This document shows, in pieces, positions 17,856 through 33,920 of a DNA stretch of 64,000 nucleotides. Each line of letters opens with the position of its first letter. Position 1 is the first letter of the stretch. Origin of the DNA: Diadema antillarum (taxonomy: Eukaryota); assembly GCF_040938485.1 (NCBI RefSeq), contig NW_027270954.1, positions 496,001 to 560,000 of the forward strand, given 5' to 3'. A program made the translations under genes and the position numbers. Under the pieces are notes generated by a model. That model was not told the DNA's origin and did no database searches. It saw nothing but the letters and a program-made list of their open reading frames with translations.

Positions 17856-18440
17856 AGTAGTAGTATAGGTGTACGTATAGCGTCATAAAAATATGATTCA
17901 TATTTCTATTGTTCTAGAACAAAAGAAATATGAAAAGACAAAAGAATTATGAATTATGAAATATGGATTATGATATGATTTATGATAAAAAGAAGGATTA
18001 TGGCATGATTTATGATAAAAATATGGATTATGATATGATTTATGATGAAAAGATGGATTATGATATGGATTATGATAAATCGATGAATTATGATAATAGA
18101 TATGAATTATGGATATTTGCATAACAATAGAAATAGGAAAGAACAAAAGAATGTATGAAATATGAAAAATGAAAGATGAATATTCATGAGATATGAATTA
18201 TAGATATTGACGATGGATGATGATTATGAAATATGAATATTTATGGATCGATATGAAATATGAAGAATGAATTATGAAAAATATGCTATTGTTTTAAGAA
18301 TCCGCGTCATTGTTTCATCATATTCTTTTGTTCTCACATCGAGAGATATTTTCGAATGCAATGGTCGAAATGGTCATAATGACGATTGCAATCGTATGCA
18401 TGACATTTGTTTGATTTGATGACGTCACTCCGACAAGTTC

Positions 18441-18875
18441 GGACCTGTCCTCTGACCGACGCTCGCCCGATCGAAAACAAAAGAACTTTAAAAAACGAAG
18501 AAATACATAAAAATGGGGGCGTGTCCTCTGACCGACGCTTGCGCAATGCTTGCGCAATCGAAGACAAAAGTCAGGGCGTGTCCACTGACCAACGCTCGGG
18601 GACTTAAAGACAAAAGACTGGAAAAACAAAGAAATACATAAGACTGGACCTCAAGTTCACGATAAGTTCGGACTTGTCCTCAGACCGACGCTCGCACACT
18701 CAAAGACAAAAGACTAGAAAAACAAAGAAATACATAAGACTGGACCTCAAGTTCACGATAAGTTCGGACTTGTCCTCTGACCCACGCTTGTACGCGAGCG
18801 AAGACAAAAGAATTTTTAAATAAAGAAATACATAAACTGGACCTGGAGCCAGTGACGGGTTCGGACTCGTCCTGC
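18441..18875 (+). repeat. Subterminal repeat cluster of B (GTCCTCTGACCGACGCT x5; AAGAAATACATAA x4)
   Basis: Visible imperfect units. Mirrored at ~32905-33340. Confidence 0.8.
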
Positions 18876-18887
18876 ATAAAACAATAA

Positions 18888-19925
18888 ATGCCTCATACAT
18901 ATTCAAAGAGATGGTGGCGTCCTTTGGAAAGCAAAAGAATAAAAACTCGAAGAACATGCGAGAGGGACACATTTCAATTTGAAACCTTCCGAGAGCATCA
19001 CATGTTACAGAATGTCTCAGCCGAACATCGCCAACACCTGGTGTCCCGAAATGCAGAGGACGGTGGAGAAGGTGGACTTGCTGATGTTGACGGAGTATCT
19101 AACTCTCATCGAAGTCTTGAAACGGGTGCAAAACGTGCCAGATTCTCCAATAGACGGTACTCCCGAAGATCCACAGCGCAAAGTGTTCCAGGCGGTTCAT
19201 CATTTGGACCCAATGACTGTGGAGAGAGTGTACCCTTACGTTGGCAGGGTGCTCTGGATGAGACCAGATCTCGTCGAGTGCGGTTTTTTCCTGGAGTACA
19301 TCAAATTTATTCTGAGGGGAGAGACTCAACAACAGCTGGAACAAAGAAGAGTCAACATAGGGAGACACGTGGAGGGGATAGAGGCCGCTGTGAGAGTGGT
19401 CTACAGGGCCTTGGGGCTCGAGACCGGCCTGCCCGACATTGTCTTGACGGACCCTCAGTGGAACGTGCTTTAGACGAACGACTGCTATTAACGGTGATAA
19501 AGGACACATTTCCTTCCGACTTTCACGCCGTAGACACCGAGACAATCTTACGCGCATGTCGGACAATTGCAAGCGAGGAACAATTTTCCCGTGTGCGACG
19601 AATCAAGCTTCGAGGCAATGAGAGGTTCGACGATTGTATAGAGGCCCTGCTCAAAAATTGTATAGAGAACCCCAATCATCCCAACAAGTACAAACGTTCG
19701 CTGATGGCTCTATGCTATTTTGTCAACATCTACCAATATGCCTGCATACCGGACGAGCGGAAAGAGGAATTTCGCGCGCAATTCGTGGAAGGACTCAAAC
19801 GCTACAAAGTGCGCTGGTCGGAACACGCTCCGAAAATGACTGTTGGACTAATGTCGCGATACGTTTTACATTTTTGTCTGTATATGTTGTATAATGTATG
19901 GAATGTAGATGTTAATAGAATGTGA
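18888..19925 (+). CDS. ORF2 of B (left-arm copy), overprinted on ORF1
   Basis: Open frame across ORF1. C-terminus homologous to A ORF2. The start may be the ATG at 18888 or at 19002. Confidence 0.7.
   Translation: MPHTYSKRWWRPLESKRIKTRRTCERDTFQFETFREHHMLQNVSAEHRQHLVSRNAEDGGEGGLADVDGVSNSHRSLETGAKRARFSNRRYSRRSTAQSVPGGSSFGPNDCGESVPLRWQGALDETRSRRVRFFPGVHQIYSEGRDSTTAGTKKSQHRETRGGDRGRCESGLQGLGARDRPARHCLDGPSVERALDERLLLTVIKDTFPSDFHAVDTETILRACRTIASEEQFSRVRRIKLRGNERFDDCIEALLKNCIENPNHPNKYKRSLMALCYFVNIYQYACIPDERKEEFRAQFVEGLKRYKVRWSEHAPKMTVGLMSRYVLHFCLYMLYNVWNVDVNRM
19012..19473 (+). CDS. ORF1 of B (left-arm copy), 153 aa
   Basis: The ATG at 19012 gives the same length as A ORF1, with clear homology. 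Confidence 0.8.
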   Translation: MSQPNIANTWCPEMQRTVEKVDLLMLTEYLTLIEVLKRVQNVPDSPIDGTPEDPQRKVFQAVHHLDPMTVERVYPYVGRVLWMRPDLVECGFFLEYIKFILRGETQQQLEQRRVNIGRHVEGIEAAVRVVYRALGLETGLPDIVLTDPQWNVL

Positions 19926-31668: not shown

Positions 31669-31854
31669 TATTCGTCTCAGCAACCACACACTGCAGAAGC
31701 AAACATCAGAAATGGCATTCCTTTCACGTTGCAATGACATAAAAGGCATCAATGATAGACAAGGTAACGAGTAAAAAAATCATTTGAAAATGAAACGCAT
31801 CATTTATTGTACACGCATACACACAGTGCAGCGAATTTCGTTGCTTGAATCAAT

Positions 31855-32892
31855 TCACATTCTATTAACATCTACATTCCATACATTATACAACATATAC
31901 AGACAAAAATGTAAAACGTATCGCGACATTAGTCCAACAGTCATTTTCGGAGCGTGTTCCGACCAGCGCACTTTGTAGCGTTTGAGTCCTTCCACGAATT
32001 GCGCGCGAAATTCCTCTTTCCGCTCGTCCGGTATGCAGGCATATTGGTAGATGTTGACAAAATAGCATAGAGCCATCAGCGAACGTTTGTACTTGTTGGG
32101 ATGATTGGGGTTCTCTATACAATTTTTGAGCAGGGCCTCTATACAATCGTCGAACCTCTCATTGCCTCGAAGCTTGATTCGTCGCACACGGGAAAATTGT
32201 TCCTCGCTTGCAATTGTCCGACATGCGCGTAAGATTGTCTCGGTGTCTACGGCGTGAAAGTCGGAAGGAAATGTGTCCTTTATCACCGTTAATAGCAGTC
32301 GTTCGTCTAAAGCACGTTCCACTGAGGGTCCGTCAAGACAATGTCGGACAGGCCGGTCTCGAGCCCCAAGGCCCTGTAGACCACTCTCACAGCGGCCTCT
32401 ATCCCCTCCACGTGTCTCCCTATGTTGACTCTTCTTTGTTCCAGCTGCTGTTGAGTCTCTCCCCTCAGAATAAATTTGATGTACTCCAGGAAAAAACCGC
32501 ACTCGACGAGATCTGGTCTCATCCAGAGCACCCTGCCAACGTAAGGGTACACTCTCTCCACAGTCATTGGGTCCAAATGATGAACCGCCTGGAACACTTT
32601 GCGCTGTGGATCTTCGGGAGTACCGTCTATTGGAGAATCTGGCACGTTTTGCACCCGTTTCAAGACTTCGATGAGAGTTAGATACTCCGTCAACATCAGC
32701 AAGTCCACCTTCTCCACCGTCCTCTGCATTTCGGGACACCAGGTGTTGGCGATATTCGGCTGAGACATTCTGTAACATGTGATGCTCTCGGAAGGTTTCA
32801 AATTGAAATGTGTCCCTCTCGCATGTTCTTCGAGTTTTTATTCTTTTGCTTTGCAAAGGACGCCACCATCTCTTTGAATATGTATGAGGCAT
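31855..32892 (-). CDS. ORF2 of B (right-arm copy)
   Basis: Mirror of 18888-19925. Confidence 0.7.
   Translation of the reverse strand: MPHTYSKRWWRPLQSKRIKTRRTCERDTFQFETFREHHMLQNVSAEYRQHLVSRNAEDGGEGGLADVDGVSNSHRSLETGAKRARFSNRRYSRRSTAQSVPGGSSFGPNDCGESVPLRWQGALDETRSRRVRFFPGVHQIYSEGRDSTAAGTKKSQHRETRGGDRGRCESGLQGLGARDRPVRHCLDGPSVERALDERLLLTVIKDTFPSDFHAVDTETILRACRTIASEEQFSRVRRIKLRGNERFDDCIEALLKNCIENPNHPNKYKRSLMALCYFVNIYQYACIPDERKEEFRAQFVEGLKRYKVRWSEHAPKMTVGLMSRYVLHFCLYMLYNVWNVDVNRM
32307..32768 (-). CDS. ORF1 of B (right-arm copy)
   Basis: Mirror of 19012-19473. Confidence 0.8.
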   Translation of the reverse strand: MSQPNIANTWCPEMQRTVEKVDLLMLTEYLTLIEVLKRVQNVPDSPIDGTPEDPQRKVFQAVHHLDPMTVERVYPYVGRVLWMRPDLVECGFFLEYIKFILRGETQQQLEQRRVNIGRHVEGIEAAVRVVYRALGLETGLSDIVLTDPQWNVL

Positions 32893-33920
32893 CTATTGTT
32901 TTATGCAGGACGAGTCCGAACCCGTCACTGGCTCCAGGTCCAGTTTATGTATTTCTTTATTTAAAAATTCTTTTGTCTTCGCTCGCGTACAAGCGTGGGT
33001 CAGAGGACAAGTCCGAACTTATCGTGAACTTGAGGTCCAGTCTTATGTATTTCATGTTTTTCTAGTCTTTTGTCTTTGAGTGTGCGAGCGTCGGTCTGAG
33101 GACAAGTCCGAACTTATCGTGAACTTGAGGTCCAGTCTTATGTATTTCTTTGTTTTTCCAGTCTTTTGTCTTTAAGTCCCCGAGCGTTGGTCAGTGGACA
33201 CGCCCTGACTTTTGTCTTCGATTGCGCAAGCATTGCGCAAGCGTCGGTCAGAGGACACGCCCCCATTTTTATGTATTTCTTTGTTTTTTAAAGTTCTTTT
33301 GTTTTCGATCGGGCGAGCGTCGGTCAGAGGACAGGTCCGAACTTGTCGGAGTGACGTCATCAAACAAACAAATGTCATGAATACGATTGCAATCGTCATT
33401 ATGACCATTTCGACCATTGCCTTCGAAAATATCTCTCGATGTGAGAACAAAAGAATATGATGAAACAATGACGCGGATTCTTAAAACAATAGCATATTTT
33501 TCATAATTCATTCTTCATATTTCATATCGATCCATAAATATTCATATTTCATAATCATCATCCATCGTTCATATCTATAATTCATATCTCATGAATATTC
33601 ATCTTTCATTTTTCATATTTCATACATTCTTTTGTTCTTTCCTATTTCTATTGTTATGCAAATATCCATAATTCATATCTATTATCATAATTCATCGATT
33701 TATCATAATTCATATCGTAATCCATTTTTTTTATCATAAATCATATCATAATCCATATTTTTATCATAAATCATATCATAATCCATCTTTTTATCATAAA
33801 TCATATCATAATCCATATTTCATAATTCATAATTCTTTTGTCTTTTCATATTTCTTTTGTTCTAGAACAATAGAAATATGAATCATATTTTTATGACGCT
33901 ATACGTACACCTATACTACT

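What the first reader, a model, noticed from the sequence alone, without database searches (positions are those of the whole stretch)
17856..33920. Defective, copy-back-like Maverick: ~3.5-kb inverted arms, two integrases, no functional polymerase, yet integrated cleanly
Seen: B's polB-side end (the polB N-terminus, anything upstream of it and the original terminus) is absent. It is replaced from 17856 to 21365 by an inverted copy of the opposite end (TIR, ORF1/2, integrase, first 94 nt of the minor capsid gene), fused at ...GGCTTCACG|AACTACCTT to mid-polB. Both ends abut an exact 6-bp TSD, so the rearrangement happened before integration and the rearranged genome was itself mobilised. Established: copy-back/snap-back defective-interfering genomes arise by template switching in viruses that use strand-displacement or panhandle replication. 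Inference: B is a DI-like or satellite Polinton genome that keeps both origins, the full virion module and a doubled integrase dose, and borrows pPolB in trans. I am not aware of such a form having been described for Mavericks.
Basis: partly seen in the sequence, partly recalled or inferred. Interest (0 to 1): 0.9.

Follow-up and report, generated by a model that had tools for sequence, protein, structure and literature searches.

The report
Maverick element with one end replaced
A 16-kb virus-like Maverick element in the sea urchin Diadema antillarum has lost its polymerase end, carries a 3.5-kb mirror copy of its integrase end instead, and sits cleanly inserted inside the capsid gene of a second Maverick. 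This is probably a fossil of a defective genome made while the element replicated as free linear DNA, but that is not proven.

Summary
Element B (17856-33920, 16,065 bp) has inverted arms of 3,510 and 3,505 nt that differ by 21 substitutions and 5 indels. Each arm carries the terminal repeat, one accessory gene, an open rve+chromodomain integrase and the first 94 nt of the gene next to it. The left arm abuts a polB remnant that lacks about 63% of the protein and has one further internal lesion. Nine other genes are open, including a capsid gene confirmed by fold. B is flanked by an exact 6-bp duplication (ATCGGC). The host is Diadema antillarum. B's capsid protein occurs unchanged on 6 contigs, and at 96-100% identity on at least 28, so the family is young and multicopy. 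The most likely origin (about 0.6) is replacement of the end during extrachromosomal, protein-primed replication, followed by integration. The target duplication does not prove this order: templated repair primed from the left terminal repeat, after integration, would give the same structure (about 0.2). A propagating defective lineage remains untested, because comparison with the other copies was referred.

The parts
13303..47180 (+). Maverick A, the host element of B. It is 33,878 bp including B and about 17.8 kb without it. Terminal inverted repeats lie at 13303-13701 and 46782-47180. The termini start with AGTAGT. The 6-bp duplication GCTGTA lies at 13297-13302 and 47181-47186.
   Evidence: read directly; gene content
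17850..17855 (.). Left copy of B's target-site duplication (ATCGGC), two in-frame codons of A's capsid gene
17856..33920 (.). Maverick B, 16,065 bp: left arm, 9,050-bp unique centre, right arm
17856..21365 (+). Left arm (3,510 nt), an inverted copy of the integrase-side end. It holds the terminus (three AGT units), 30-nt and 96-nt tandem arrays, the accessory ORF 18888-19925 with a nested 153-aa ORF, the integrase 20029-21204, and the first 94 nt of the gene next to it.
21366..22954 (+). polB remnant, a broken gene given as one part. It matches residues 1048-1654 of a 1,655-aa relative. It has two lesions: one 5' truncation, and one internal deletion of about 76 residues with a change of frame.
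23513..24181 (+). Packaging ATPase (Pox_A32-like), open, full length against A's copy
24221..25360 (+). Two conserved Maverick ORFs of unknown function (114 aa and 255 aa), open, 65% and 47% identical to A's
25358..27325 (.). AT-rich (GC 0.32) ORF-poor spacer between the two convergent gene blocks
27323..27844 (-). Adenain-like cysteine protease (Peptidase_C5; 21.2 bits, just under the cut-off of 21.3; A's copy scores 26.7), open
27888..29237 (-). Major capsid protein with a double jelly-roll fold, 443 aa from the first ATG, open. The exact protein occurs on 6 contigs of Diadema antillarum.
29275..30509 (-). 146-aa ORF and 253-aa ORF. The 253-aa ORF is called the minor capsid (penton) protein by position only. 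Both are open.
   Evidence: the fold test failed
30416..33920 (-). Right arm (3,505 nt), the original integrase-side end: start of the 253-aa gene, integrase 30577-31752, accessory ORF 31855-32892, tandem arrays, terminus (two AGT units)
33921..33926 (.). Right copy of B's target-site duplication (ATCGGC)
17331..34736 (+). A's major capsid gene, broken once by the insertion of B. The pieces 17331-17855 and 33921-34733 are both open and match B's capsid residues 1-174 and 174-443 at 70% identity.
39304..44267 (-). A's polB, a broken gene given as one part. A 1,655-aa relative is covered end to end, but in two frames, which means one frameshift.
46104..46649 (-). A's PC4-domain (single-stranded-DNA-binding) gene next to the polB-side terminal repeat. 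B has no counterpart.

Best explanation
B descends from a normal Maverick of about 18-19 kb belonging to a young, multicopy family of Diadema antillarum. While that genome existed as free linear DNA copied by a protein-primed polymerase, synthesis that had started at the integrase-side end left its template inside polB. It resumed on the complementary strand (its own 5' part, the displaced strand, or a second co-replicating genome) 94 nt into the gene next to the integrase, and ran back out to the terminus. The product lost the front of polB, the PC4-like gene and the original terminus, and gained a second integrase-side end. It kept two identical replication and integration termini, all particle genes and a normal genome size. 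It was then inserted by a Maverick integrase, with a 6-bp duplication, into the capsid gene of the resident Maverick A.

Shown here: the architecture, the clean insertion, the open genes and the youth of the family.

Inferred: that the rearrangement came before integration, the template-switch mechanism, and that polymerase was supplied in trans.
For: - Architecture: two arms at 99.3% identity, with the inner end of the left arm falling inside a gene and joined to mid-polB with no shared sequence at the join.
- Insertion: exact 6-bp duplication and an exact split of A's capsid gene, with both pieces open.
- Termini: they carry the (AGT)n motif reported for Mavericks and linked to jumping-back initiation (PMC8097293). 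The unit number differs between B's ends, as slippage at initiation would give.
- Size: 16,065 bp is within the 16.9 +/- 1.7 kb reported for intact Mavericks.
- Gene state: all nine non-polB genes are open and full length against A's.
- Age: the capsid protein is identical on 6 contigs and 96-100% identical on at least 28. Little time has passed for a rare chromosomal accident, whereas replicating linear viral genomes are known to produce such forms.
- Arm differences: they are densest in non-coding DNA (1.36%), lower in the accessory gene (0.39%) and lowest in the integrase (0.26%). This fits divergence under selection, or two related parental genomes, better than uniform decay after insertion. 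The evidence is weak.
- Precedents: end replacement that lengthens terminal repeats is known in other linear replicons (PMC5869714; PMC10230479).
Against: - Only one locus was examined.
- The target duplication does not fix the order of events.
- Under a single self copy-back the arms are identical at birth, so the 26 differences need later divergence or a second template.
- The uneven spread of differences (a post hoc change point about 1.6 kb from the terminus) also fits a model in which only the inner part was newly copied.
- No full-length parent and no intact polymerase of B's lineage was seen.
- Raw reads were not available, so the join is unverified.
Confidence: 0.58

Rival explanations
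1. Repair after integration. A normal B inserted into A. Later a double-strand break in its polB half was resected to the left terminal repeat. That repeat paired with the 'wrong' (integrase-side) repeat of the same copy, the sister chromatid or another family copy, and synthesis copied inward for about 3 kb. The end was then joined without homology to the other broken end in mid-polB. The terminus and the 6-bp duplication stay untouched, and no mobilisation of the rearranged form is needed.
For: - It gives exactly the observed structure.
- It explains why the arms are not identical and why differences are denser towards the terminus: 10 of 12 events lie in the outer 1.45 kb (array excluded) and 2 in the inner 1.9 kb. 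In this model the outer part would be the old left repeat.
- Arm replacement after breaks is documented in Streptomyces linear chromosomes (PMC5869714).
- At least 28 near-identical family copies could serve as templates.
Against: - It needs a parental terminal repeat of about 1.6 kb that reaches into the accessory gene. That is at or above the longest reported (1,447-1,500 bp) and four times A's 399 nt.
- It needs a rare chromosomal event in a very young insertion whose other nine genes are untouched.
- It requires removal of a long non-homologous 3' tail.
Confidence: 0.2
2. Assembly artefact. A chimeric or fold-back read, or a wrong path through the repeat graph of a multicopy family, produced the left arm.
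For: The family has many near-identical copies, terminal repeats invite wrong paths, and no reads could be inspected.
Against: - The arms differ at 26 places, so they are not one sequence used twice.
- A graph error would switch at shared sequence, but the inner end of the left arm has no homology to the polB remnant.
- The element is the size of a normal Maverick and is framed by an exact duplication that splits A's capsid gene in frame.
- There are no Ns in the window.
Confidence: 0.08
3. A propagating non-autonomous (defective-interfering or satellite) lineage. This is the first reader's full claim: the rearranged genome has been copied, packaged and inserted repeatedly with a helper's polymerase. 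It is a subset of the best explanation.
For: - It keeps two termini, the particle genes and the integrase, at a normal genome size.
- The only further lesion in 16 kb lies in the already dead polB remnant.
- The differences between the arms follow coding constraint.
Against: - No second copy with the same join was looked for.
- Both polB lesions could come from one complex event.
- The arm differences rest on 12-21 sites.
- The two elements in the window have no intact polB, and none of B's lineage is in the protein databases.
Confidence: 0.25

Closest known systems
Maverick/Polinton elements of animals (e.g. the vertebrate Mavericks surveyed in PMC8097293)
   Same: Same gene set and order: polB, ATPase, two small ORFs, protease, major capsid, small ORF, minor capsid, integrase. 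Same (AGT)n end motif, 6-bp duplication and size of about 16-18 kb.
   Different: Reported terminal repeats are 46-1,447 bp or 100-1,500 bp and hold no core genes. B's arms are 3.5 kb and hold the integrase. The polB front and the original end are gone.
Adenovirus defective genomes with long inverted terminal repetitions in incomplete particles (my own knowledge of Daniell's 1970s work; Daniell and Mullenbach 1978 is cited in PMC13506859, but was not held)
   Same: A linear genome replicated by protein priming and strand displacement, with one end replaced by an inverted copy of the other. Both origins are kept and replication genes are lost.
   Different: Those are free molecules in particles from cultured cells. 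B is an integrated germline copy with a target duplication. No particle or helper is shown here.
Chromosomal arm replacement in Streptomyces linear chromosomes (PMC5869714)
   Same: A replicon capped by terminal protein. One arm is lost and an inverted copy of the other replaces it, which lengthens the terminal repeats.
   Different: There the exchange goes through homologous repeats on both arms after a break. In B the inner join shows no homology, and the size scale is kb, not hundreds of kb.
Poxvirus terminal transposition / ITR expansion (PMC10230479, PMC12508240)
   Same: A deletion near one end coupled to an inverted duplication from the other end, with genes becoming diploid inside a longer terminal repeat.
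   Different: Hairpin-ended genomes with a different replication chemistry. The rearranged viruses remain autonomous.
Copy-back defective viral genomes of negative-strand RNA viruses (e.g. PMC6140465)
   Same: Template switching gives a genome with complementary ends and a loss of coding capacity.
   Different: RNA, far smaller, no integration. The complementary ends are short relative to B's arms, which carry genes.

Membership tests
Maverick/Polinton | [quoted passage not shown] | tested here: inconclusive
   B has only a remnant (Pfam DNA_pol_B_2, E 6e-26, profile positions 212 onward). It is homologous but cannot be functional. A has the whole gene with one frameshift.
Maverick/Polinton | Retroviral-type (rve) integrase | tested here: met
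   rve E 9e-14 plus a C-terminal chromodomain. There are two open copies in B that differ by one residue.
Maverick/Polinton | Double jelly-roll major capsid protein | tested here: met
   The AlphaFold model has pLDDT 93.9. Foldseek matches the major capsid proteins of an iridovirus, PBCV-1, Sputnik and mavirus, at E 1e-16 to 1e-13.
Maverick/Polinton | Minor capsid (penton) protein | tested here: inconclusive
   The 253-aa ORF is in the expected position. The model was too poor to use (pLDDT 42), and there were no Pfam, PDB or PHROG hits.
Maverick/Polinton | A32-like packaging ATPase and adenain-like protease | tested here: met
   Pox_A32 scores 24.5 bits (cut-off 22.8). Peptidase_C5 scores 21.2 bits in B (cut-off 21.3) and 26.7 in A.
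Maverick/Polinton | Terminal inverted repeats, 6-bp target duplication, (AGT)n or (AG)n end motif | tested here: met
   The motif and duplication length are as in PMC8097293.
Copy-back / defective-interfering genome | One end replaced by the inverted complement of the other, with loss of internal sequence | tested here: met
Copy-back / defective-interfering genome | Formed during genome replication, before integration | not testable with these tools
   The target duplication is compatible with formation before or after insertion. Deciding needs other copies or other alleles.
Copy-back / defective-interfering genome | Depends on and competes with a helper genome | not testable with these tools
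   No polB of B's lineage was found. Interference is a functional property.
Non-autonomous transposon family | Several copies with the same internal join but different target duplications | not tested
   At least 28 loci carry the family's capsid gene. Their DNA was not fetched; the step was referred.
Arm replacement / terminal-repeat expansion | Deletion at one end plus inverted duplication of the other, giving longer terminal repeats | tested here: met
   The arms are 3.5 kb, against 399 nt in the sister element A.
Arm replacement / terminal-repeat expansion | Exchange through homologous repeats present on both arms | tested here: inconclusive
   There is no homology at the inner join. A crossover inside the old terminal repeat cannot be excluded.

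The most novel reading that the evidence does not exclude
B is one member of a propagating, polymerase-less Maverick lineage. It arose by copy-back during extrachromosomal protein-primed replication and has since been copied, packaged and integrated with a helper's polymerase. That would make it a natural satellite or defective-interfering form of a Maverick, and the first sequence-level trace of how Mavericks replicate outside the chromosome.
Probability: 0.25. Interest if true: 0.8.

Novelty: new variant of a known kind. Interest (0 to 1): 0.55.

Why it matters
Maverick replication has never been observed; protein-primed, strand-displacement copying of a free linear genome is inferred only from the genes and the end motifs. 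A genome with one end replaced by the mirror image of the other is the classic by-product of that replication mode.

If the rearrangement came before insertion, three things follow:
- A free replicating form existed in the sea urchin germline.
- Integration needs only the termini and an integrase, not a polymerase in cis.
- Mavericks can spawn non-autonomous derivatives that keep the particle genes.

The locus also shows one Maverick landing in another. That fits an integrase with a chromodomain, which may steer insertion to silenced repeats (inference).

If the structure instead arose in place, it is a tidy example of wrong-end templated repair between terminal repeats, and of less general interest.

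Tried and rejected
- **Short relatives of B's polB remnant.** Nothing above 65% identity in the 253-805 aa range, so there is no protein-level sign of further truncated copies. This is uninformative, because the open pieces of A's polB are also absent from the database.
- **Full-length polB of B's lineage, searched with the A polB region.** Best match 74%, so no parent was found.
- **Integrase search.** Best match 68%, so no family copies are annotated.
- **Exact look-ups of ten ORFs.** Only the capsid protein is on record.
- **Fold of the 253-aa ORF from a two-sequence alignment.** pLDDT 42; not used. PDB profile search and PHROGs found nothing.
- **Microhomology at the inner join, using A's polB as proxy.** A is too diverged to say.
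- **Literature.** No paper on copy-back or arm-replaced Polintons was found. The 1978 adenovirus paper was not held.
- **Alignment of the AT-rich spacers of A and B.** Not alignable.
- **Rejected: a second B-family copy inserted into B, followed by deletion.** The left arm runs without interruption from the terminus that abuts the target duplication, so its end would have to coincide exactly with the first copy's end.
- **Rejected: a long-repeat architecture that is normal for the family.** The arm ends inside a gene, and the polB remnant has no start and a broken frame.
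Full report
**What is in the window**

The window holds two nested Maverick/Polinton elements.

Element A:
- It runs from 13303 to 47180.
- Its terminal inverted repeats are 399 nt long with one mismatch.
- Its termini begin with AGTAGT.
- It is flanked by the exact 6-bp duplication GCTGTA.

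Element B:
- It runs from 17856 to 33920 (16,065 bp).
- It lies inside A and is flanked by the exact duplication ATCGGC at 17850-17855 and 33921-33926.
- Its left terminus has three AGT units and its right terminus two.

Without B, A is about 17.8 kb. There are no Ns in the window.

**Host and family**

B's 443-aa capsid ORF is an exact match to NCBI proteins of the sea urchin Diadema antillarum, where they are named 'F54H12.2-like'. The exact sequence is on 6 contigs. The 90% cluster has 16 distinct sequences at 96-100% identity, placed on at least 28 contigs. The family is therefore multicopy and young.

**Check of the observation**

The arms are confirmed. Left 17856-21365 and right 30416-33920 align with 3,483 matches, 21 mismatches and 5 indels.

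Each arm contains:
- the terminus;
- 30-nt and 96-nt tandem arrays;
- an accessory ORF of 345 aa with a nested 153-aa ORF;
- an integrase with rve and chromodomain hits;
- the first 94 nt of the next gene.

Both copies of both genes are open. The integrases differ by one residue.

Directly inside the left arm, homology to polB begins.

**Gene content of B**

From the right end inward, B is collinear with A from A's left end. Identity to A's copy is given in brackets.

1. Accessory ORF
2. Integrase (59%)
3. 253-aa ORF (64%)
4. 146-aa ORF (59%)
5. Major capsid protein (70%)
6. Protease (49%)
7. An AT-rich spacer of about 2 kb
8. 255-aa ORF (47%)
9. 114-aa ORF (65%)
10. ATPase (67%)
11. The polB remnant (about 64-65%)

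This order is the one described for vertebrate Mavericks (PMC8097293).

Tests of individual genes:
- **Capsid.** A model built from 64 homologues (pLDDT 93.9) matches solved double jelly-roll capsid proteins of an iridovirus, PBCV-1, Sputnik and mavirus.
- **253-aa ORF.** It is called the minor capsid protein by position only. The fold test failed.
- **Other genes.** All nine non-polB genes are open and full length against A's.

**The polymerase**

Relatives of this clade have polB proteins of 1,508-1,655 aa.

- **B's remnant (21366-22954).** It matches residues 1048-1654 of a 1,655-aa relative, in two frames, with about 76 residues missing inside. That makes two lesions: one 5' truncation removing about 63% of the protein, including the part that matches the exonuclease half of the Pfam model, and one internal deletion with a change of frame.
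- **What else B lacks.** A's PC4-domain gene (E 2.6e-15), A's 325-nt tandem array, and an end of its own on the polB side.
- **A's polB.** It spans 39304-44267 and has one frameshift. A's capsid gene is broken once, by B. Its two pieces are open and meet B's capsid sequence at the same residue.

Neither element in the window can supply a polymerase as it stands.

**Is it an artefact?**

This is unlikely, though it cannot be tested without reads.

- The arms differ at 26 places, so one sequence was not used twice.
- An assembly-graph error would switch paths inside shared sequence, and the inner join has none.
- The element is the size of a normal Maverick. It is framed by a perfect duplication that splits A's capsid gene in frame.

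**When did the rearrangement happen?**

It does not. A break in the polB half of an integrated normal copy could be repaired in three steps:
1. The left terminal repeat invades the integrase-side repeat of the same or another family copy.
2. Synthesis copies inward.
3. The end joins the other broken end without homology.

This leaves the terminus and the duplication as they were. Arm replacement of this kind is documented after breaks in Streptomyces linear chromosomes (PMC5869714).

Within the window, the only evidence that bears on the question is the pattern of arm differences:

| Region of the arm | Substitutions |
|---|---|
| Non-coding outer part | 1.36% |
| Accessory gene | 0.39% |
| Integrase | 0.26% |

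- The spread is non-uniform: p = 3e-4 on raw substitutions.
- After the 30-nt array is excluded and adjacent changes are merged, a post hoc change point about 1.6 kb from the terminus gives p of about 0.006. This rests on 12 events.
- A uniform pattern would be expected from neutral decay after a single self copy-back.
- The gradient fits three things: divergence under selection in a live lineage, arms that come from two slightly different family members, or an older outer repeat with a newer inner copy.
- It does not discriminate firmly between these.

Reasons I still favour a rearrangement before integration (about 0.6):
- The insertion is very young and otherwise undamaged, so a rare chromosomal accident had little time to happen. 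Replicating linear genomes throw off such forms readily.
- The in-place model needs a parental terminal repeat of about 1.6 kb. That is at or beyond the longest reported and four times A's.
- B has a packageable size and two complete termini with the slippage-prone AGT motif.

**Comparison with what is known**

B is a member of the Maverick family by gene content, end motif, duplication length and capsid fold.

The rearrangement has the same form as several known cases:
- adenovirus defective genomes with long inverted terminal repetitions (my own knowledge; cited in PMC13506859);
- poxvirus terminal-repeat expansion (PMC10230479, PMC12508240);
- Streptomyces arm replacement.

My searches found no description of such a form for Mavericks or Polintons. 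Surveys report terminal repeats of at most about 1.5 kb without core genes. I therefore rate it a new variant of a known kind.

**What remains open**

Whether B is a one-off or a member of a propagating polymerase-less lineage depends on the other copies of the family. Protein-level searches gave no handle.

**Rule compliance**

- A's pieces were compared apart.
- Alignments across frame changes were reduced to counts and outer bounds.
- One slip: I located B's internal polB deletion in my thinking while reading. The place is not repeated anywhere.

Noticed in passing
window 46104-46649 (-): A's last gene before the polB-side terminal repeat has a PC4 (single-stranded-DNA-binding, transcriptional coactivator p15) domain, E 2.6e-15. 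It is a candidate DNA-binding protein for strand-displacement replication. B lost it together with the polB end.
   Followed up: partly
window 19012-19470 (+), 32310-32768 (-), 13787-14245 (+): The accessory gene next to the integrase-side repeat holds a nested 153-aa ORF in another frame. The nested ORF is better conserved between A and B (49-50% aa) than the long frame is (26%). Two of the three arm differences inside it fall at its third codon positions, while all four differences in the long frame change its residues. The nested frame may be the real gene, or the two frames may overlap as genes.
   Followed up: partly
window 39304-44267 (-): polB proteins of this clade are 1,508-1,655 aa. 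A's 409-aa ORF (42987-44213), which has no Pfam hit, is the N-terminal part of polB. One relative is named by JGI as a very-short-patch-repair endonuclease, which hints at an inserted nuclease domain.
   Followed up: partly
window 25358-27325 and 35312-36976: The spacers between the convergent gene blocks of B and A are AT-rich (GC 0.32) and ORF-poor. They cannot be aligned with each other, yet each carries an 8-nt tandem array (26144-26212 and 36645-36701) with similar units.
   Followed up: partly
window 2914-4072 and 47455-48545: There are two copies (95-99% identical, in inverted orientation) of a repeat of about 1.1 kb with 171-nt internal inverted ends, like a MITE or foldback element. 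One lies 275 bp from A's right end. More interspersed repeats lie at 9357-9811 / 63035-63462, 12458-12676 / 48748-48966 and 6610-6721 / 49381-49492. The neighbourhood is repeat-rich, and outside A there is no ORF of 150 aa or more.
   Followed up: no
window 44645-45647: A has a 325-nt tandem array (3.1 copies, with a 152-nt sub-period) between the start of polB and the PC4 gene. B has no counterpart.
   Followed up: no
window 20029-21204, 30577-31752, 14879-16006: All three integrases end in a chromodomain (Pfam Chromo, E 4e-7 to 9e-9). This may explain insertion into another, presumably silenced, Maverick (inference).
   Followed up: no
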